Below, one piece after another: positions 27,101-43,400 of a stretch of DNA of 64,000 bases. The stretch comes from Tubulanus polymorphus (Eukaryota > Animalia > Nemertea): assembly GCF_964204645.1 (NCBI RefSeq), contig NC_134033.1, positions 14,268,655-14,332,654 of the forward strand, in the 5' to 3' direction. The notes under the pieces were generated by a model that worked only from the letters and a program-made list of their open reading frames with translations, had not been told where the DNA came from and ran no database searches. Position numbers and translations under genes: made by a program. Position 1 is the stretch's first letter; each line of letters starts with the position of its first letter.

Positions 27101-30100
27101 TCGCGATTATTTCTGACGCAGCTAGTACCGGTAGGTTTTTAACCCTTTCAACTGCGGTGTATACATCAGTGATGGATTTTGCTAGTACACCGCAATGCAG
27201 TGTATTGATGTAATTAGTAATTATCCCTCTTGAAAAATGGCAGCGCGTGTCAAACATAGTGAAATACTAGTAACTAACGTTACACCGCACCGCAGTGTAG
27301 ACACACTATAGTGGTATTCCCGTTGTTCAACACACTAGGGTGGAATTTTTTAGAATTTTCAAATTATCTCCAGCTCTATAGGGTATTAATTAGTCAGCAC
27401 TGAAAGGGTTAACGATATGTTTAGTATAGTTGATCGACAGTCTTTGATCTCGTCTATCTATAGTAAAACCCAACGTGCGCAATACAAGGAGATACAGAAA
27501 CACATTTGACAAACATGTTTGATCTTGAAAACACTGTTTCCTGAAATCTTGTTTCAAGTACCGGGTAAGCGCACACGACACAGGCACATACGCTCTGTTT
27601 CCACGTTTCCGGCGCCCAGTGCTTTGGACTTTACGATATAACTCTATGCTTTAACTCGTCGTAAAATGAACCGGACCCAGTTCCGCAGTTGTGAGTTCAG
27701 ATTCAACTCGGAGCTAAGTAATTAGAAATATTGAATTAACTCTAACTGCGTTGAGTTACCTCTAACTCAAAACTGTGGAACTGGGCCCAGTTGAACTCGC
27801 TTATCTCCGATCAACCGGGATTGGAAAATGTTGTCTGACTTAAACGAAATCCGAATAATGTGCTCTCGTTTGAATAGAAGTAACCTAGAGAGAGGACTGG
27901 AATTTTAGTCCGAAATAAGTGAAAATCGGAATAAAACCGATCGGAATTTAACGCATTTTACTGAACTAACTGGATACTCAAGGATTTAAGTCTCGTTGTT
28001 TTAGGTATATCACTCCACGCGGATCATCGAGTCGGCAATCAACGCAGACGCATTCATTTAACGATCGAGTTGCCGTGGAGCGCGGATAAAGCCGTCCAAC
28101 AACTAGGACGATCGCATCGTTCAAATCAGTCGAGGTGAGCAGTGGTTACTTCGGGGTTCGTTTCCAAGAAAGTTCATTTTTGGTCATTAAGCTATCGGTC
28201 TATCAATGTTTTCAATGAGGACAACAATCAAAACTGAAAAGGGGTTTAAGCTTAAACTTCTGGGGCCGGTTGCATAGTCATGGCTTAGACTTAAGACCAG
28301 TCTAAGACCAACTTAATTCTTCTTGGGAGCCACTCATTCGCATGTGCTCCACTCATCCACATGTATTCCACTCATCCACATGTATTCCACTCATCCACAT
28401 GTATTCCACTCATCCACATGTATTCCACTCATCCACATGTATTCCACTCATCCACATGTATTCCACTCATCCACATGTATTCCACTCATCCACATGTGCT
28501 CCACTCATCCACATGTATTCCACTCATCCACATGTATTCCACTCATCCACATGTATTCCACTCATCCACATGTATTCCACTCATCCACATGTATTCCACT
28601 CATCCACATGTATTCCACTCATCCACATGTATTCCACTCATCCACATGTATTCCGCTCATCCGGTATTGTTTGTCTGTTACAGCGGACCGTTGTATAAAC
28701 TACTAACGACTAATCTCGGTGGAGAGCGCCGGTTCGCTGCGGCCGTCGCGCGGAGATTACTCAGTTTAGGAGCGTTGACTAAAGGAGACCGTCGAGCGGC
28801 TACCGGCGCTGATTTGACTGATTTTAATTTCGACACGCCGTACGGACGGTCGGCTCTACGCACCATGTATAACGCTATAATCAAGGTTCGTTACTCGGCC
28901 AGTTAACAAGAAAATACTAATCCTTGTTGTTAGGATGATTTATAAAGAATCCCCACGATAATGTACCAATGAAAGAATGATATCAAGTCCTCGTGAAGAT
29001 GACTATTAGGTTATAGTCGAAACGTCAAATAAACTACCAGCTCGAGGAAACATTTTCTTACTTAATATAATTTTTTCGTTGGTATTATGGCATTCTCTAT
29101 ATGTTACTCTGCCAGTGTTACTGCGGCAAGCGGTGATCTGCTGGGTTCACCTTTCTGATGTCATATTTTTATTGATAATTGTAGCAGTGGGTCAAGAAAA
29201 CTGCCCACTAAGTTTCACATCGAAATGCCTTTCATGAGAAATGTGGTTAATAGCTTATTCTATAATGTGTCTTTTTCTAAGGTCTCTGCATGGACAGAGC
29301 TGCCAACTGTGAAATACTGATTACAAGAAATACTGATTTGATTTGTTTGAAATATGAAGGATGTTACTGACAGTCTTAATGTTGATATTTGAACATTTTC
29401 TTTCATATTTCAATAAGATGTTACTGAAAAAAATTCGATTTGTTTTCGATGGCACTTTTCAGTGGTTGGCAGCCCTGCATGGATATGTTAACCTGCTCTT
29501 GAAAACGCCAAACAGAATTGTTAAATCATCAACTGTGGGTTTTGCTCAATAACTCTGAAATATTGAGGTTGATTTCAGTCGTATTTACTACATGTTGTTT
29601 ACAGCGAGAACTGCCAAATGGAATCATTGAATCCGAGGTGATCGGCGATTGCGCAGACTTTCAGATATTCTCCGGATTGTTGACGGATTGTTTGCCGTTG
29701 ATGGGTATCGTCGACAGTCAAGGTCACGTCGGGCAGGTTCTGAAGGAGAAAGACTTGAACGACGTCGGCAAATTTCTGAATCGAATCCTCGGCTTGTCGG
29801 TCAGATACCAGAACATCGTAAGTCGTATCCGATATATATATATAAGGGTGGCTCCGAAATTATCCGAATCAGAACTGTTACGATTTGTGACTATAAACGC
29901 TGTTCATAATTTTGGAGAAATTCATACAAATATGGTTCTTACGGGTTTCCGGAAGTTTTGAAAATGGGGATTTTCTTCCAGGCCCTATGAAAAGTTATGG
30001 AATATTTTTTCTCTATGGCTATGGAGAAGGTATGGAAAATCAGAAAATGGTCTCAGAATAGGATTTTCCTACATTACCTGTTCTAGGTTGGGAATGTATA

Positions 30101-33100
30101 GCTTAGGGGTATGGAAAATTTTTAATCCGGGCGTGGAAAAGATATGAAAAATGAAATCGGGAAACCTGTAAGAACCCTGAAGAAATCAATTTTGTCTCAA
30201 GCTTCAAATAATGATGTGTAATTCTCAAATCAAACTCCTTTCCAATAGTTCGGTGTAATTTTTTCGTTGCAGATTTTCACGTATTTTAGTAAATGTCTGG
30301 AGAACGCGATTCAAATCGCGAAGAAAGAAGGGCATTATAACGAAGGCCTCGTTGATCTGACCGCGACGTCTATTAAAATACACGGCGTACCGGAGACCAT
30401 CTTTCAGGACAGTCTTTCAGGAATCGAAACTAAGTAAGTTACACAGGGTTTCGATTGAAATATGGGAAATGCAAATATCGGATATCTGCAATAGAAAATC
30501 GTTTAAAAAATGTGAAATATTTTTTAAAATAAGTGAAAAATGTGAAATACTTCTAAAAATCAGTGTGAATTTATGAAAAAGTGCGAAAAATTTAAGAAAA
30601 GTAAAGTCAAGATAATTTGAAATACTTCGATCCATTTTCAGGCACAAAACGTTGATCGTAGACCGCGGAATGAGTCTCCAGGTGGCGTTAGAGAAGAGTC
30701 GAAAATACACGGGGAAACACGACGGATTCTACGTGTCTCGTAACGAGGTCAGAGGTCATAAGTTCTATCTGTTAGCGATGCAGAGAGAGAACTCGACGCA
30801 CATGTTTAAGATAGCCAGGTGCGCATTCAACAATAGCCCCATTAGCTAGCTGATATTTTATTTTAGTACTTTAACACCCACTAAACCAAGGGGGCTGGCA
30901 AATTATTCCAAAAACTCTGAAATGAAAGAAAAATATTGACACTATATACAGGGCTCTTATAGATTAAGGAGGATTAGGAAATTCCAGATTTATTTTTCCC
31001 TGTAGTTGGAAAATCCTGAAGTCAGGCAATTTTGACTTCAAGGAATTGGAATTTCAGGTGTCTTGTTGTTCTTGCTGGTGACGAGTGGCACAAGGAACCT
31101 CTTGATAAGAAACAGCATCCACTGAAAATATCTTATAATTTCATCAGGGAATTTTATTTTCTGGTTTCTTGTTGTTCTCGCTGGTGACGAGTGGCACAAG
31201 TAACCTCTTGATAAGAAACAGACCCCACTGAGGATATCTTATAATATAATCAGTGACCCCTTTGGTTGAGGGACTTCATGCATTCCCTGATCCGCAAAAA
31301 CCCTGTATACGTATATTAAAACAGAATTAAAAGCCTTCAATCTGTAGGGATACTAAAATCCTTGAAGCCCTCAACAGTTTTATGGTTGGTTTCCATAGAC
31401 AAGTGGCTGTCCAATATCAATAGTAGATAAAAACCCACAATAAAAAGAAAAAACTATCTTGTAGCTTAACGTTTCAACTCAATTCTATGAGCCATTATCA
31501 AAAACTGTTTTTGATAATGGCTCATAGCATTGAGTTGAAACGTTAAGCTACAAGATAGTTTTTTCTTATTATTGTGGGTTTTATCTACTAGTTTTATGGT
31601 GTTATTAAACAAAGCGATGTTTTGTCATTTTCTAGACCGAATACCGGTATGTCGGCGTTCGACGAAGAATTGTCGTGGTTGAATAATAAATATATCAAAG
31701 TCGCGCCGCATAAACTGGAATCGGCGAAGGAAGGATGGAACGAAGCGTACGACAGAATGAAATCAGAATGTATACACGGTCCGTTGTGTAAACACGGCCA
31801 TGATTGTACAGGTAAATAATCCTCTCCAACATAGCTTAGTTACGCGATGTAAGTTGTTGGACCAAAGGGTAACTTCGTTCAGCAATTTGTCTAGGAAATC
31901 ACTCTCATTAACCAGTCACCAGGCTGAATTGTGAATTATTGAGTTGAATGCGTAATACCGCAAATATGTACAGTCTCGATATTGAGTGGGGTAGCCTTCA
32001 GATCGAGCTCATTATGAGTAAGAAACAAAACCCTTATTATGGTACATTGATAGACGCCGCAGTGGTATTCAGCGATTGTCCGAGCGGGAAGGCCGTTAAT
32101 TACAGGTATCTATTTGCAAAGGGGTCACGATAAAGTGCTTGTTGTGATCACTGCTGTTTCAATTCTCTTCTAAGACTAAGAAAATTGATCCGCGCAATGA
32201 ATAACAACAACAGAAAGCTCATCGTCGATAACAATTGTAATTCCGCGCGGCGCGAGATTCAACCATTTGTTTCTCAGAGTTTGTCTAATGCAGTCGTGGT
32301 ATTATTATTATTATTGATTATTTTCAGTCGGCAGTCGATGTTATAAAGTTCATCTATTGTGCGGAGGTATTGTTTCGATGATGGCGTTGTTAGAAGCGAG
32401 CATCGCCCGATTCGGCACTAAACTACAACTCACGTAAGGAAACTTCGCTCGAAAATGATTAATAACCAATCCTAAGATGATGATATTTTTGAAGTTAATT
32501 CATCTAACATTATCGGGGTCCCTCTGAATCCTTAAGAACTCCATCAAAGTGGAAAATGCTTTTAAAGGTGCTCGAGACTCTTTCAATTAGAGCATAATGT
32601 CAGAAACTCCTTCAATTTTGAGAAATAGTCAATTAGAAATTTTTGTCTAGTTCGTAGTTGTACCGAAATCTACGGGTACCACTAAATCCGTACTGTTAGG
32701 ATCAGGCTTGATTTTTACCCAATTAGGCAGTAACCGAATTAGAAACCAAGATATATAGACTACGCCTAAGTCAGTTGAGTTGGAACCAAGATCTATTTTT
32801 GTTACCTGATTAGGTGGTACCATAAATAATAAACCAAATAAAAAACCAAGTTTAGTAGTGTCCAGAATGAATATATGTTTATGAAACGACCAAATTACCA
32901 GTTGTATAGAAAGGCATGTAAACCCACAGTGGAAATAAACAACTATTTTGACTACGAATACCGGTATGAATTTATACAGATTAATATGTGTGACCGCACT
33001 TTAGAACTTATTGATCGAGAGTAAATATGGCACGACTAGCAAATAAATATGAGTTTAGTTTAGGTTTGGCATGATTTAATGTCTAACAGCCTCGGGGTCA

Positions 33101-37472: not shown

Positions 37473-40400
37473 ATGATCGACAAAAATGGAGACGCCAATC
37501 ATAACATACGATTTGATACACAAACAAAAAAACTAGTAAGTGTCACACATGTTATTCGTTGTTTTGGTAGAATTTTCTATTAGTCATATATATCGTTCAA
37601 GCGTCGATTTATTTGAGCTATACAGTCGCAATGAAGTTGTCTTCGGGTGATCTCGGGCGGCGGCTATTGTGAACGGTTATTCCGTGTAATCGATCCGGTG
37701 AAATTAGACACTAATTGCGCCGTTCAATAGAAGCCAAACCGATCGAGGGCGTGTTCCTCCTAATGTAAGATGTTATTCCACACTGGAGCTATAAATATAC
37801 ATTAGCGAGTACCGGTACGGCTGAATACCTGTCGTTGCTGACGTGCTTAACAAGATGATAACATTTGCCCGCGCTTTTCGAGGCGATCATTTTTTCATTC
37901 ACTCGAGTAAAATAAGGCTAAACAAAAATGATACCTTGTTTCTCCGCAGCGGCCGGGTCATTTTTGTAAAATATGATAAAATTTGTAAACAGTTCATTCC
38001 TATAGCGGCCGGGTCTGTTATGGTAAAATTGATCACGATTTCAAAAAAGTAATGTATAGGGTAGATAGGCGGCCGGCCGGGTCAACATTTAAGCTCAGCA
38101 GAGCGGAGAAACAAGGTATCAATTTTTTTTAGCCTAAGATATATAGATTTTCATGCGATTAATAATGCGTATGAAAAATGAGATGTTCGATGAATCATGC
38201 GTCGTTGAGCCTACCAGGAAGTCCCCTGATCTGACGACCATTTCTATAAATGTGATAAAATTTCACCCCGTTTGGTCTTGACGATAATTACCCTTAGACG
38301 CGCCGTGAAAAATTATATAACCCTCGTAAATTATGCGAGTGATTCTCACAACTTCCGCTTTTGGTTGGCGGCGCCACTGTACGGCGTCGAAGGGCCATTG
38401 CCTCATTAGGGATTTAAATGACCAGTGTACATGGCCTTATTAGTTTATTTTCAAGAAATACAGACGAATGCGTATCATGTTATTTTCTGAACTGGTTAAA
38501 GAACGTACGGTCAATTTTACGGTGCCAGGTCAATAATTTAACGTTGACCCGGTGCCGGCAGATGTCAACAACATAAGTCGACCCGTGAGGCATATGTTAT
38601 ATCAAACTTTAGATTGAATATGGGCGGCTTTATCATTATGTAAATCAACAGAATATCCTCCTAAAGACCGCATATAATGCATGGCCTCTCTTTACCTGTT
38701 TACACATACACGTAACACATATATCGATAATATCTAAGTAGCATATATACAGCTGTTCGGAAAGAATGGAACGTTTTGTCAGGATGAAATCTTCATGATA
38801 TGAACTATAACATCGTAATGTACTACTGCTATCACAAGACTCCGCTTAATTTACGTCCATATTTGGATGTCTCACGTTTTAACCTGCAGTTAATATAGTT
38901 CAATCAAAAACAATATGCGACTCGTTGAAGTCCTCTATTCCAACACACGACGCCATTCACGCAGTTCGGGCTGGGATTTTTAACGATGCTTCGATGATTT
39001 ATTTGACCGTCACTATATGGTACGTGTATAATTGCAAAATGAAAAAAAAAAACGAATAACTCGATCGTGATTTGGCACCCGGGTCGAATAGTAAACCCAC
39101 TCTATTTTCCGCTGGAGTCATACGTGATCCGGGACAGCTGTCGTTGTAGCGTTGTATTTCCCTATATCATTGATAATAATACTTTCACCGGTTGATATTA
39201 TGTTTTTGTTCGAAACCTACATTTTACAGCGATTAGAATGAGTGTATATGTTTTGAAAGAAAAAATTCGCGATATTCAGGCTTAACGCAAGCCTGCATGT
39301 ACACGCTTCTCGTACCTACGTTTGTATTGATATGTCAAGGACCCGAAGAACATTATTCATATCAGCGACTACTGAATATTGTTTACCTAACACAAATCTA
39401 CCCTTGAACTTGATATACAAGTATTGAATAAATATATATCGCATTCGAAAAACCGATATCTTCCTCTTCGTATTCGCGTAGTAACATGTGAAGTAATTAA
39501 CTATACGAAAAATTCATGAACCAGAATAAACGATTTATCAAAACGTGACTAGAGAGCTGAAAAGGGAGTCTCAGACAGTTATTTGTTACTTGCTCCTCGC
39601 TTGTCAAATCAGTTATGAAAATGTCTCATAGTTGAGTCTAAATAAACTTCACTGCTCTCTTATGAAAATGGCTCTTGAAATTAAGACTAAGCGTCACAAC
39701 TCTCTTAGTCTTGAAAATGGCTCATAGAATTGAGTCTAAACGTCACTCTTTCTTAGTTTTGAAAATGGCTCATAGAATTGAGTCTAAACGTCACAACTCT
39801 CTTAGTTTTGAAAATGGCTCATAGAATTGAAGTCTATACGTCAAAACTCTCTTAGTTTTGAAAATGGCTCATAGAATTGAGTCGAAATGTCACTATTCTC
39901 TTAGTTTTGAAAATGGCTCATAGAATTGAAGTCTAGACGTCACAACTCTCTTAGTTTTGAAAATGGCTCATAGAATTGAAGTCTAGACGTCACAACTCTC
40001 TTAGTTTTGAAAATGGCTCATAGAATTGAGTCTAAACGTCACAACTCTGTTAGTTTTGAAAATGGCTCATAGAATTGAGTCTAAACGTCACAACTCTCTT
40101 AGTTTTGAAAATGGCTCATAGAATTGAAGTCTATACGTCAAAACTCTCTTAAATTTGAAAATGGCTCATAGAATTGAGTCGAAATGTCACTATTCTCTTA
40201 GTTTTGAAAATGGCTCATAGAATTGAAGTCTATACGTCAAAACTCTCTTAGTTTTGAAAATGGCTCATAGAATTGAGTCGAAATGTCACTATTCTCTTAG
40301 TTTTGAAAATGGCTCATAGAATTGAAGTCTAGACGTCACAACTCTCTTAGTTTTGAAAATGGCTCATAGAATTGAAGTCTAGACGTCACAACTCTCTTAG

Positions 40401-43400
40401 TTTTGAAAATGGCTCATAGAATTGAGTCTAAACGTCACAACTCTGTTAGTTTTGAAAATGGCTCATAGAATTGAGTCTCAACGTCACAACTCTCTTAGTT
40501 TTGAAAATGGCTCATAGAATTGAAGTCTAGACGTCACAACTCTCTTAGTTTTGAAAATGGCTCATAGAATTGAGTCTAAACGTCACAACTCTGTTAGTTT
40601 TGAAAATGGCTCATAGAATTGAGTCTAAACGTCACTACTCTCTTAGTTTTGAAAATGGCTCATAGAATTGAGTCTAAACGTCACAACTCTGTTATTTTTG
40701 AAAATGGCTCATAGAATTGAGTCTAAACGTCACAACTCTCTTAGTTTTGAAAATGGCTCATAGAATTGAGTCGAAATGTCACTACTCTATAACTTAGTTT
40801 TCATCATTTAGTTGTGGGTACAGATTTTGTAAACAGTTTGAGACTATTTCAAGTCTTGAATATTATTGAGCGAGAACCCAAAATAGGAATCAAAACAACA
40901 ACTGTTGTGATGTATTTTGTAAACCACTATTGTAACAGTTGTTGTTCGTTTTCGCAGTTTAGACTTGTCTATTGGAAACCAACATTACCAGGTGTCGTTA
41001 TGAATACAGTGGAACCTCGTTAAAACGATCTCATATTCGATTTATCTGTTTTTACTAACATAGAATTTCATCGCAAATATGATTATTTTGATAATCTCAT
41101 ACTGGATATAACGAACTATCGGTTATATTTAACGAGAATATATTTACTGGGTTAAGCGAGGTTCCTCTGGATGAACCTGTTTTTTCTTTGAATGACTTTT
41201 TTTCAAAGAGTGTACTCAGTCATGGGTGGATCTAGCCTTGGTTTTTGAACTGCTTACACTGTGGAGGGACACCTACGTATATAGTAGCTTAATACGGTGA
41301 ATTGTTACGGCTCTGAGATGCAATCTGAGCACATTTGGGGTATCAAATATGTGATATATCCCATCCATTCATAAAATATGCAATTTCGACCTAAAGGAAA
41401 TATCATTCATAAAACAAATAATAAAAACTTGCCAAAATCACGCGATATCTCTGATCAAAGTCAGATCAACTCATCGATAATGACTCACTTGCCAGAGGCA
41501 TTTCATCCAAGTAAAACTGGATTTTTTCACGACGAACTTGCAAAATAATAAAAGGACACCTGAGTACCGCTGAAGCGGAGCCTGAATCTGTCCCACTCAG
41601 ATGAACGTGTTTTAATGTGTATAGTTAACGGTGAAATTGTATTTTGATACTCATAATAATCACGCTAATAGCTCAAATTTACTGAAGAAAGAGACTTCGA
41701 CAACGATATTTGAACGGTTCATTTCGTTTCTTTTCAGTCGAAATCGACAATCGAAGAGTTGGAGTCGAAATTCTACGAAAGTTTTGAAGAAACTCCGCTC
41801 GTCTCGGCAATAATCACCTACATCATCTATGGAATGCTCGCCATCTTCGGGCATTTCCGGGATTTCCTTCGTAGAAATGGCTACGAGAAAAATCAGTCGG
41901 CCACCGAATCAACTAAATATAAGGTACATGGATACGATTTTCATTTCGACGGAAGCGTCATTTGGCGACGTGAGATAAAAACTATCGTTGGAATTAATTC
42001 TGGCTTGATATTATGTTTCGAAATAAAATCGCCAAACTTTGCAATTTAATCGAAAGCATTTTTCTCTGAGCGGCATTTTGTCGGGATTATTTCTAATTTG
42101 TTTTAATCAATGAGTATTCCTACTACCTGCAGTTGTCCTGGGGATATTTCAATCGAATGAAACGTTTCTTGAAATCTTTTTATCTCACGTCCCCAAGGCG
42201 CTTATACGTACGTAACCACTATGATAAAAATGCTACAACACTTTCTTTGTTTTGTTCTTTTGTCTTGCGTTCTATTTTTGTCTTTCAGTGCTGACTAATT
42301 AATACCCTATGGTGCTGGAGATAATTTGAAAATTTTAAAAAATTCCACCCTAATGCGTTGAATTACGGGAATACCACTATAGTGCGTCTACACTGCGGTG
42401 CGGTGTATCGTTAGTTACGAATATTTCACTATGTTTGACAGGTGCTGCCATTTTTCAAGAGAGATAATTACTAATTACTAATTACATCAAATACACCGCA
42501 GTGCGATGTACTAGCAAAATCTTTCACTGATTTATACACCGCACTGCGGTGTAGACGTAGTGAAAGGGTTTAAGCTGAAATGCTAAGCTGTTTCGATTTT
42601 GTTTTGTTCGTGGTGCGTCAATTTACGTAAAATGAAACCAGAAAACTTAACTTGAATCTTTATTGATGCCTTGAAAAATAGCAAACATATCGTTTCATAT
42701 TGTCGACAATAAATGATATAGTATAAAGTTTATAATATAAAAGATCAATGAAGTTATTTTGGATTTGAAGATATCGATAATGGAGAATTGAATTGACCGG
42801 CAACCAGTCTAGTTCCAAAATATTGATGACGCACAACCCCTCAAAATAATCATTGAAATTTATCAAAAATAAAATAAGAGCGAATAATGAAATCTATTCA
42901 ATTACAAAATAAACACCACAATTCACAATTGTTATTGTTATTTTGAACGCCAAAATTGATGACGCAGTACACTAACTCAACTAGGTGTTAATGTATATGA
43001 ACATTATTGTTACGATTTTTACTGCGTCAAAAAAGAAAAAAAGAATTAGTTCATAAATTAGTCAGGCATGACTCCATAGATTCATGTCATCTAACTGATT
43101 TGTTTTGTAGGAATTCGTACCGTTGTATTCGAGTTTTGAGAGTTTTTTCACGCGTAACATCTACACGCGAATCAGGGATTGTTGGAATCGACCGATATGC
43201 TCAGTGCCCGGAGCCCGACTTCAATTGTTAGAAAGATACACCGAAGACTACGGATGGACTTTCAAGTAATTCTAAAAGCATTATCCGTATAGAAACGTTG
43301 TGTTAGCTCTTGGTGGCACAAATTGTAACCGATGGATCTAGTTGATATTTTGTTATTTGGAAGGAAAAGGGGTTGGAATCAATGTGGAAAGTTTCGTCCA

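What the first reader, a model, noticed from the sequence alone, without database searches (positions are those of the whole stretch)
39615..40800. Minisatellite built from ~24 tandem minimal hammerhead-ribozyme units in SPTLC2 intron 1
Seen: each 49-bp unit parses as TTGAAAA-T-GGCTCA-tagaat-TGAGTC-(G/T)AAA-(C/T)GT-C. That is a hammerhead-like core, a 6-bp stem II, a GAAA box and a GUC triplet. Known: Penelope-like elements carry minimal type I hammerheads whose tiny palindromic helix III (ACGU) works as dimers, and a U3-A8 pair can replace C3-G8. The unit's TTGAAAA is that compensated variant. Only four units keep the catalytic G12 (GAAA at ~39884, 40181, 40280, 40773); the rest have T there. 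Variants recur in higher-order blocks (A-A-B-C-D-D-like). Inference: this is a ribozyme-derived satellite far shorter than described retrozyme monomers, lying on the sense strand of a housekeeping pre-mRNA and mostly inactivated. Stem I pairing is weak and needs a bulge.
Basis: partly seen in the sequence, partly recalled or inferred. Interest (0 to 1): 0.8.

Follow-up and report, generated by a model that had tools for sequence, protein, structure and literature searches.

The report
Dead Penelope-type hammerhead satellite, 49 bp
This 1.2-kb repeat in a ribbon-worm gene is a tandem copy-up of a tiny self-cutting-RNA (hammerhead) motif from a Penelope-type jumping gene, but every copy here has lost bases the cutting reaction needs, so it is most likely an inert relic.

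Summary
The window is from a ribbon worm, not human.

- The same unit sits once per arm in a ~200-bp foldback element. One copy lies at 31388-31589 in this window and at least 40 more are dispersed in the genome.
- That element has the insertion signature described for Penelope-like elements (PLEs): ~12-bp target duplications, head-to-head arms, a 33-nt tail at one end only, and tail-anchored truncated copies.
- Its motif passes a PLE-type minimal-hammerhead descriptor (U3-A8 core, bulge after A9, 6-bp helix II, GAAA, palindromic CG, 4-7-bp helix I).
- The motif is 25/31 identical to one just downstream of a GIY-YIG reading frame of an abundant ~2.86-kb repeat in this genome.
- G12 is ancestral: 22% of array-edge units have it, against 1.2% of internal units.

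No unit of this array is a competent hammerhead. Twenty lack G12, the four with G12 have a non-palindromic helix III, and none has helix I.

"Intron 1" of the SPTLC2-type gene is likely, but exon 1 was not located. Cleavage and expression are untested. The scan had already noted a different 69-bp Penelope-derived hammerhead satellite in this genome.

The parts
39615..39710 (+). Two decayed leading units of the 49-bp array
   Evidence: Unit dissection. nhmmer with the unit profile starts here.
39711..40796 (+). 22 well-formed 49/50-bp units (types A, B, C, D, with the block B-C-D-D-A'-A duplicated). Each is a relic of a Penelope-type minimal hammerhead. Twenty of the 24 array units have U at position 12.
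   Evidence: TRF, unit list, per-variant parse, no descriptor hit.
39858..39906 (+). Type C unit with G12. Positions 15.2/16.2 are UG (not palindromic) and helix I has 1 bp.
40155..40203 (+). Type C unit with G12, same defects
40254..40302 (+). Type C unit with G12, same defects
40747..40796 (+). Last (edge) unit, G12 type, next to the terminal module
   Evidence: listed as WIN 'last' with G.
40797..40823 (+). Remnant of the element's terminal module (TTTTCATCATTTAGTTGTGGGT), homologous to the outer arm of the compact element
   Evidence: The last unit plus its right flank aligns with the compact arm: score 64 against a null maximum of 32 in 2,000 shuffles. The same motif flanks many other arrays.
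40824..40880 (+). Possible decayed tail with a small hairpin (GAGACT/AGTCTT) ending in GAGAACCC. Uncertain.
   Evidence: Read from the sequence by eye against the family's tail. The terminal-module profile did not hit here.
31388..31589 (-). Compact, array-less copy of the parent element. It has a 33-nt tail (31388-31420) and two head-to-head arms (31430-31505 and 31507-31582, 97% complementary), each carrying one hammerhead-type unit. The inferred RNA sense has the tail at the 3' end, which is the window's minus strand.
   Evidence: Terminal-module profile hit, E 8e-8. Sequence and inverted repeat. At least 40 dispersed copies at 88-97% identity. Alignment of 23 copies.
31376..31386 (.). Left copy of the target-site duplication AGTTTTATGGT of the compact element, followed by one extra T at 31387
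31590..31600 (.). Right copy of the target-site duplication AGTTTTATGGT
31511..31548 (+). Min-HHR descriptor hit in the right arm: U3-A8 core, bulge U, 6-bp helix II, GAAA, CG, U16.1, U17, 4-bp helix I
31463..31501 (-). Min-HHR descriptor hit in the left arm on the opposite strand, with a 5-bp helix I
41738..41923 (+). First recognisable coding exon of the SPTLC2-type serine palmitoyltransferase gene. It starts at the acceptor tttcttttcag|TCG, has no in-frame ATG, and ends at the donor AAG|gtacat.
   Evidence: Later exons on the + strand include the [11 protein letters not shown]-lysine motif at about 48.65 kb.

Best explanation
The array is a tandem amplification of the 49-nt hammerhead-bearing inner segment of a small non-coding retroelement that was spread by Penelope-like element (PLE) machinery.

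The basic mobile unit is one arm of about 120 nt: a minimal hammerhead, a ~40-nt outer module, and a 33-nt tail with a small hairpin. It usually inserts as a head-to-head pair with the tail on one side only and ~12-bp target duplications.

In one lineage the segment from hammerhead position 3 to the start of the outer module was multiplied into arrays of 5-37 units. The multiplied unit carries U instead of the catalytic G12 and has lost helix I. Units at the array edges often still have G12.

The copy in this window lies in the sense orientation about 1 kb upstream of the first recognisable coding exon of an SPTLC2-type gene, most likely in intron 1. It then grew locally by block duplication.

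Shown here: the anatomy, the genome-wide family, the PLE-type insertion signature, the descriptor match of the parent, its similarity to the motif downstream of a GIY-YIG frame, and the ancestral state of G12.

Inferred: mobilisation by a PLE reverse transcriptase, how the tandem copies arose (template switching at insertion, or unequal exchange later), and that the array RNA does not cut itself. The last point follows from established knowledge that G12, A13 and A14 are essential core positions.
For: - Array anatomy.
- Genome-wide family: at least 215 matches on at least 8 contigs. U12 motif: 340 exact matches against 0 for the control, all in tandem.
- Arrays carry an inverted head unit and a shared terminal module.
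- The compact copy in this window is a 76-nt-arm foldback, with at least 40 dispersed copies at 88-97% identity. All partial copies are anchored at the tail end.
- All 23 examined copies have flanking duplications, modal length 12 bp, against 6 bp or less for nearly all mismatched-flank controls.
- These features match the PLE hallmarks in PMC8557442, PMC3846280 and PMC11167929.
- Min-HHR descriptor: 22 real hits in 266 kb on both strands, 0 in 40 dinucleotide shuffles, and 3 in 46 Mb simulated with none having helix II of 6 bp or more.
- One hit is independent of the family. It lies about 115 nt downstream of a GIY-YIG frame (Pfam 18.9 bits across the whole profile; atlas neighbours are GIY-YIG families). 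The repeat holding it has copies at 99-100% identity, a uniform 3' end, and tandem spacing of ~2,860 bp, which equals the spacing of the 817-841-aa GIY-YIG frames.
- That motif is 25/31 identical to the array's G12 unit.
- 153 G12 motifs genome-wide (control 0) form a continuum between the two types, with helix II kept paired.
- G12 occurs in 17/79 edge or inverted units against 5/411 internal units, p = 9e-11.
Against: - No Rfam hammerhead model hits the array or the compact copy, even at E <= 10. Rfam may simply not model helix-III-less PLE variants.
- The autonomous partner sharing this family's arm and tail was not found. The PLE whose motif is similar has a different 3' end, and outside the hammerhead the similarity is not significant.
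- No compact copy or array lies next to a listed GIY-YIG hit.
- The GIY-YIG Pfam score is below the curated cut-off, and no reverse-transcriptase sequence was examined.
- Within arrays, helix II changes mostly break pairing, and positions 3/8 never vary.
- A transcript through both arms of the compact element would fold into one long hairpin of -115.6 kcal/mol and could not form a hammerhead.
- The target duplications are fairly uniform at 12 bp, which by itself would also fit a cut-and-paste enzyme.
- No RNA or cleavage data.
Confidence: 0.75

Rival explanations
1. Ordinary minisatellite whose resemblance to a hammerhead is a coincidence of a short hairpin plus A-rich flanks, with no ribozyme ancestry.
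For: No Rfam hammerhead hit. No unit passes the descriptor. Two-unit RNA is no more stable than shuffles, z about -1. Array variation does not preserve helix II. A relaxed descriptor is expected to hit a 268-Mb genome some tens of times by chance, extrapolating from 3 hits in 46 Mb.
Against: The same unit in its parent element passes the full descriptor with a 6-bp helix II, which never occurred in 46 Mb of simulated sequence. It is 25/31 identical to a motif downstream of a GIY-YIG frame. Intermediates link the two types. The parent has the PLE insertion signature, which was found independently of the motif. G12 is enriched 18-fold at array edges.
Confidence: 0.06
2. The family is a cut-and-paste DNA transposon (a MITE or foldback element) that carries an internal satellite. 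The inverted arms are terminal inverted repeats, and the hammerhead-like motif is incidental or captured.
For: Long, near-perfect inverted arms. Dispersed short copies with target duplications of fairly constant length, 12 bp in 14 of 23. Arrays sit between inverted terminal modules. This was my own working idea until.
Against: The extreme ends are not inverted repeats, because the 33-nt tail is on one side only. All partial copies keep the tail end and stop at variable points, and solo arms exist. There are 1-3 extra T at the tail junction in 13 of 23 copies, and the other end varies. From my own knowledge, no cut-and-paste superfamily makes 12-bp duplications. No transposase partner was seen.
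Confidence: 0.1
3. A working ultra-small retrozyme: the array is transcribed within the SPTLC2 pre-mRNA and cuts itself, through the G12 units acting as dimers, into 49-nt multiples that circularise.
For: [quoted passage not shown] The array is in the sense orientation in a gene that is probably widely expressed. Four units have G12.
Against: Twenty of 24 units lack G12, and the B and D units also lack A13 or A14 and have a bulged helix II. The four G12 units have AUGU instead of the palindromic ACGU, are never adjacent to each other, and have 1 bp of helix I. Even intact PLE min-HHRs cleave poorly in vitro (PMC4209133). Cutting in the sense strand would destroy the host pre-mRNA.
Confidence: 0.03

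Closest known systems
Minimal hammerheads (min-HHRs) of Penelope-like elements, including the U3-A8 core variant (Cervera and de la Pena 2014, PMC4209133)
   Same: U3-A8 core, an unpaired nucleotide between A9 and 10.1, a 6-bp helix II, a 4-7-bp helix I, no real helix III with a palindromic CG at 15.2/16.2, paired motifs on opposite strands, and a position near the 3' end of a GIY-YIG element in the same genome.
   Different: In this array the catalytic G12 is U in 20 of 24 units and helix I is gone. The main compact type has G10.1-U11.1 instead of the usual G-C. The motif sits in a ~200-bp non-coding foldback and in 49-bp arrays, not in the pLTR of a coding element.
Non-LTR retrozymes: tandem repeats with type I hammerheads in animal genomes, such as newt satellite 2 and coral, mussel and axolotl repeats (PMC7229834). 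A 2026 preprint proposes they are non-autonomous derivatives of PLE pLTRs (10.64898/2026.07.22.740005).
   Same: Tandem head-to-tail repeats in which every monomer carries a hammerhead-type motif. Low GC, dispersed arrays of variable copy number, and a probable PLE origin.
   Different: Published monomers are 150-450 bp with canonical, active type I hammerheads and make circular RNAs. Here the monomer is 49 bp, is little more than the motif itself, is of the minimal PLE type, and is catalytically disabled. Expression is unknown.
The 69-bp Penelope-derived hammerhead satellite of the same genome
   Same: Same genome and same kind of thing: a PLE 3'-end hammerhead amplified in tandem and scattered. 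These are AI notes and were not re-tested here.
   Different: Different period (49 vs 69 bp) and, as far as I can tell, a different family. The 69-bp units are described as genuine motifs, whereas the 49-bp array units have lost G12.
PLE insertion architecture: pLTRs, an inverted 5'-truncated copy, a one-sided 30-40-bp tail, short target duplications, and trans-mobilised solo pLTRs (PMC8557442, PMC3846280, PMC11167929)
   Same: Head-to-head arms with a palindromic junction, a 33-nt tail on one side only, tail-anchored truncations, solo arms, and flanking duplications.
   Different: The whole element is only ~200 bp with no coding part. Duplications are ~12 bp, against 8-10 bp in the rotifer examples. 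The autonomous partner is not identified.

Membership tests
Hammerhead ribozyme, PLE minimal type (tested on the array units, 39615-40796) | G12-A13-A14 of the catalytic core | tested here: not met
   20 of 24 units have U12. B units read UAUA and D units read UAGA. Only 4 units read GAAA. Genome-wide, 96% of array units have U12.
Hammerhead ribozyme, PLE minimal type (tested on the array units, 39615-40796) | C3-G8 or compensated U3-A8, with U4 G5 A6 A9 | tested here: met
   UUGAAAA in all good units. The pair never varies, so there is no covariation evidence.
Hammerhead ribozyme, PLE minimal type (tested on the array units, 39615-40796) | Helix I of at least 4 bp flanking the core and the cleavage site | tested here: not met
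   1-2 bp in all four unit types. No descriptor hit with helix I >= 4, even when G12 is not required.
Hammerhead ribozyme, PLE minimal type (tested on the array units, 39615-40796) | A15.1-U16.1 with palindromic 15.2/16.2 for dimer formation, and H17 | tested here: inconclusive
   ACGU-C in the U12 units, but AUGU-C (not palindromic) in the four G12 units.
Hammerhead ribozyme, PLE minimal type (tested on the parent compact element, 31388-31589, and its copies) | Full min-HHR descriptor: core, optional bulge, helix II 4-8 bp, GAAA, palindromic insert, U16.1, H17, helix I >= 4 bp | tested here: met
   21 hits in the compact family, often on both strands of one copy. Null: 0 in 21 Mb of shuffles and 3 in 46 Mb simulated, none with helix II >= 6 bp.
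Hammerhead ribozyme (any type) | Site-specific self-cleavage | not testable with these tools
   No RNA or biochemical data. Known PLE min-HHRs cleave weakly and only as dimers in vitro (PMC4209133).
Rfam hammerhead families (Hammerhead_1, _3, _II, HH9, HH10) | Covariance-model match | tested here: not met
   No hammerhead family among matches up to E = 10 for the array or the compact copy, and none at gathering score in the window. The whole-genome RF00163 search found nothing, but its control also found nothing anywhere, so it is uninformative.
Penelope-like-element-derived non-autonomous retroelement | One-sided 30-40-bp tail, an inverted 5'-truncated copy, 5' truncation, and short target duplications | tested here: met
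   33-nt tail on one side in all 23 copies. Head-to-head arms. Partial copies all start at the tail end. Duplications 9-15 bp, mode 12. Definitions from PMC8557442, PMC3846280 and PMC11167929.
Penelope-like-element-derived non-autonomous retroelement | Shares its 3' end (or pLTR) with an autonomous RT/GIY-YIG element of the same genome | tested here: inconclusive
   Only the hammerhead is shared (25/31) with the one PLE 3' end I could read (L007). The rest is not significantly similar. Intermediates exist genome-wide. Other PLE loci could not be fetched.
Non-LTR retrozyme | Tandem monomers of 150-450 bp, each with an active type I hammerhead, expressed as linear and circular RNA | tested here: not met
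   The monomer is 49 bp and the motif is disabled. Size range from PMC7229834. Expression is not testable here.

The most novel reading that the evidence does not exclude
The U12 arrays are not just local decay. Loss of self-cleavage may be what allowed multimeric RNAs of a 49-nt hammerhead unit to survive and be copied by Penelope machinery as whole arrays, while G12 units kept at the edges mark the original element ends. That would make this a natural experiment on what the PLE hammerhead does: it would limit template length. It would also be the smallest hammerhead-only repeat family described. What I observed: dispersed arrays on many contigs share the same U12 internal unit, and G12 is 18-fold enriched at their edges.
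Probability: 0.15. Interest if true: 0.6.

Novelty: new variant of a known kind. Interest (0 to 1): 0.4.

Why it matters
Hammerhead-bearing tandem repeats (retrozymes) and Penelope-element hammerheads are known, and a recent preprint argues the first derive from the second. This family shows that link inside one genome, in miniature: a ~120-nt arm, then a ~200-bp foldback, then 49-bp arrays.

Three things stand out:
- The monomer is about three times shorter than any published retrozyme monomer.
- The amplified unit is the catalytically dead U12 form, while edge units keep G12.
- The array sits in the sense strand of a housekeeping gene, where an active self-cutting RNA would be harmful.

It is a useful case for asking what the Penelope hammerhead is for, and whether losing it promotes array formation or tolerance inside genes. 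By itself this array is most likely inert.

Tried and rejected
1. My first reading was an ordinary minisatellite in which G12 is a rare local mutation. It rested on Rfam silence, no conserved flanks among nine loci, and 96% U12 with no covariation in 416 units. I abandoned it after finding the compact parent element, the PLE motif, and the G12 enrichment at array edges.

2. A MITE, foldback or Helitron/Helentron carrier was considered when inverted head units and terminal modules appeared. It was set aside because of the one-sided tail, tail-anchored truncations and junction T's.

3. The whole-genome search with Rfam RF00163 found nothing, but the control genomes also gave nothing, so it is uninformative.

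4. A genome search with a 74-nt terminal module found only 3 places, so it was too insensitive. A local profile worked instead.

The autonomous partner therefore could not be sought directly.

6. Comparing coordinates by eye showed no compact copy or array within 10 kb of a listed GIY-YIG hit.

7. Similarity between the PLE 3' end and the compact arm outside the hammerhead is not significant: score 21 against a null mean of 16, p = 0.06.

8. Folding is uninformative for the array (z about -1). For the full compact element it argues against a hammerhead fold.

9. Exon 1 of the SPTLC2-type gene was not located.

10. A look-up of the PLE motif in the scan's notes by sequence gave a blank.

11. 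A formal pair count on the genome-wide motif variants was left out because those short strings have no reference. I only read them by eye.

The window is not human, so that restriction did not apply.

Full report
**Origin of the window.** The window carries invertebrate-type genes: a strawberry-notch-like ORF, a C2H2 zinc-finger gene and an SPTLC2-type gene. Earlier notes of the scan name the genome as a ribbon worm, Tubulanus polymorphus (not checked by me). It is not human, so the restriction on human contigs did not apply.

**The observation.** Tandem Repeats Finder reports one array at 39663-40788 with period 49, 22.8 copies and 91% matches, plus an equivalent 99-bp period. Cutting at a fixed anchor gives 24 units from 39615 to about 40796, the first two decayed. 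Each good unit reads TTGAAAA-T-GGCTCA-TAGAAT-TGAGTC-(T/G)AAA-(C/T)G-T-C followed by about 15 nt. There are four unit types, and a six-unit block (B-C-D-D-A'-A) occurs twice, so the array grew partly by block duplication.

**First tests went against the hammerhead idea.**
- Rfam found no hammerhead family in the window at gathering score, nor in the array at E up to 10.
- The 49-mer is not private to this locus. It forms arrays of 5-37 units on at least eight contigs, with no conserved flanks at first sight.
- In 416 near-full units from 29 arrays, the 'G12' column is T in 96% and G in 1.2%.
- Positions 3 and 8 are invariant T and A.
- The commonest changes in helix II break pairs, for example G.T to T.T in 40% of units.

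On this evidence alone the array would be an ordinary satellite with a small hairpin.

**The family has a parent element.** Many arrays carry one inverted unit at their head. On one or both sides they also carry an outward-facing terminal module ending in a small hairpin and GGAAACC. A profile of that module hit the window itself at 31388-31443, E 8e-8. That position holds a compact, array-less copy of the element: two head-to-head arms of 76 nt (97% complementary, one base between them), each containing one copy of the unit, plus 33 extra nucleotides on one side only.

This compact element is a dispersed family with at least 40 loci at 88-97% identity. All partial copies start at the tail end and stop at variable points (118-154), including single-arm copies. 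All 23 copies examined have flanking direct repeats, with a mode of 12 bp and a range of 9-15. Nearly all mismatched-flank controls gave 6 bp or less. There are often 1-3 extra T at the tail junction, and the other end is variable.

The literature describes exactly this combination for Penelope-like elements (PLEs):
- heavy 5' truncation, an adjacent inverted 5'-truncated copy, and a 30-40-bp tail at one end only (PMC8557442);
- 8-10-bp duplications, palindromic head-to-head junctions, and pLTRs that suffice for mobilisation in trans (PMC3846280);
- a tail that results from internal initiation of reverse transcription and is called unique to PLEs (PMC11167929).

They also mean that Rfam silence is weak evidence.

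I wrote a descriptor from that text and ran it on the 266 kb I held, on both strands. It found 22 hits. It found none in 40 dinucleotide shuffles, and 3 in 46 Mb of simulated sequence, all with the minimum 4-bp helix II. Twenty-one hits are the compact family, often on both strands of one copy.

The remaining hit, in locus L007 at 2502-2541 on the minus strand, has a different sequence. It lies about 115 nt downstream of the end of a reading frame with a GIY-YIG match (18.9 bits, below Pfam's 22.6 cut-off but spanning the whole profile; nearest atlas clusters are GIY-YIG families of animals). It sits in a repeat whose copies are 99-100% identical, end at the same 3' position, occur head-to-head and in tandem about 2,860 bp apart. 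That spacing equals the spacing of the genome's many 817-841-aa GIY-YIG frames. I take this to be the 3' end of an autonomous PLE.

Its motif (core UUGAAAA, bulge G, GACUCG/UGAGUC, GAAA, UCGA, U, C) is 25/31 identical to the array's G12 unit, with score 32 against a null maximum of 28. A genome-wide pattern search finds 153 such G12 motifs against 0 for the reversed control. They form a continuum between the PLE type and the compact type, including mixed forms. Nearly all keep helix II paired through A-U, G.U or G-C (read by eye).

**Direction of change.** G12 is present in 17 of 79 edge or inverted units but in only 5 of 411 internal units (Fisher p = 9e-11). Edge units are the least homogenised, so G12 (in the context GAGUCGAAACGUC) is ancestral and the amplified internal unit is a U12 derivative. 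The U12 motif has 340 exact genome matches (control 0), essentially all in tandem at 49-50-bp spacing.

**What this array can and cannot do.** None of its 24 units passes the descriptor.
- Type A lacks G12.
- Types B and D also lack A14 or A13 respectively, and have an extra A in helix II.
- Type C has G12 but AUGU instead of the palindromic ACGU.
- All have only 1-2 bp of helix I.

From established knowledge of the hammerhead core (G12 as general base, A13 and A14 invariant), these units should not cleave. Two-unit RNA is no more stable than shuffles. For the compact element, a transcript through both arms would form one hairpin of -115.6 kcal/mol. Only a single-arm RNA could adopt the hammerhead fold.

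**Gene context.** Exons of an SPTLC2-type serine palmitoyltransferase lie on the + strand from 41.7 to 51.3 kb, including the [11 protein letters not shown]-lysine motif. The first recognisable exon (41738-41923) starts at a good acceptor. It has an in-frame stop upstream and no ATG in between, so at least one exon lies further upstream. I did not find exon 1.

**Comparison and verdict.** The closest known things are PLE minimal hammerheads and the non-LTR retrozymes, whose monomers are 150-450 bp (PMC7229834) and which a 2026 preprint derives from PLE pLTRs. The scan's own earlier notes describe a different 69-bp PLE-derived hammerhead satellite in this genome. I read them after reaching the PLE link, and they agree with it.

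The present family differs in three ways: its 49-bp monomer, its dead core with live-type edges, and its ~200-bp foldback parent. I file it as a new variant of a known kind, of moderate interest. The autonomous partner, any expression and any cleavage remain untested. I could not fetch more genome loci.

Noticed in passing
window 31388-31589: A compact ~200-bp foldback retroelement lies 8 kb upstream of the array. It has 11-bp target duplications and a minimal hammerhead motif on each strand. It sits among exons of the strawberry-notch-like gene. Rfam gives sub-threshold matches to plant MITE-derived miRNA hairpin families (MIR9563, 78.9 bits against a gathering score of 90), which only reflects the long hairpin.
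   Followed up: yes
L007 2435-3152 (minus strand) = G000:C8:2528959-2529676: The 3' end of a very young, abundant Penelope-like element: a GIY-YIG frame, then a U3-A8 minimal hammerhead about 115 nt downstream, then a uniform 3' end. Genome copies are 99-100% identical, occur in tandem about 2,860 bp apart and head-to-head, which suggests current activity.
   Followed up: partly
G000:C6:21615000-21635400: A block of about 4.9 kb containing a 49-bp array is itself repeated in tandem at least four times (arrays at about 21619, 21624, 21629 and 21634 kb).
   Followed up: no
genome-wide: The U12 arrays lie mostly in the distal few Mb of contigs (for example C1 30.6 Mb, C2 31.2 Mb, C3 1.1-1.4 and 26.3 Mb, C6 21.4-21.6 Mb, C8 0.2-2.5 Mb). 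The G12 single motifs are spread along the contigs.
   Followed up: no
flanks of arrays in L009, L014, L023, L037: A second, unrelated tandem repeat family (period roughly 47 bp) recurs next to several 49-bp arrays, so these are repeat-rich neighbourhoods.
   Followed up: no
window 40883-40956: A ~20-bp-arm inverted repeat (AACAACAACTGTTG...CAACAGTTGTTGTT) lies just beyond the array's right end. It gives only weak, sub-threshold miRNA-family matches (mir-6, 19.9 bits).
   Followed up: no
window 28323-28906: All three + frames are open through a tandem repeat encoding reiterated [19 protein letters not shown]-like peptides. It is probably a non-coding minisatellite.
   Followed up: no
L007 1975-2088: A perfect 43-nt inverted repeat with a 28-nt spacer lies next to a 49-bp array. 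It may be another small foldback element.
   Followed up: no
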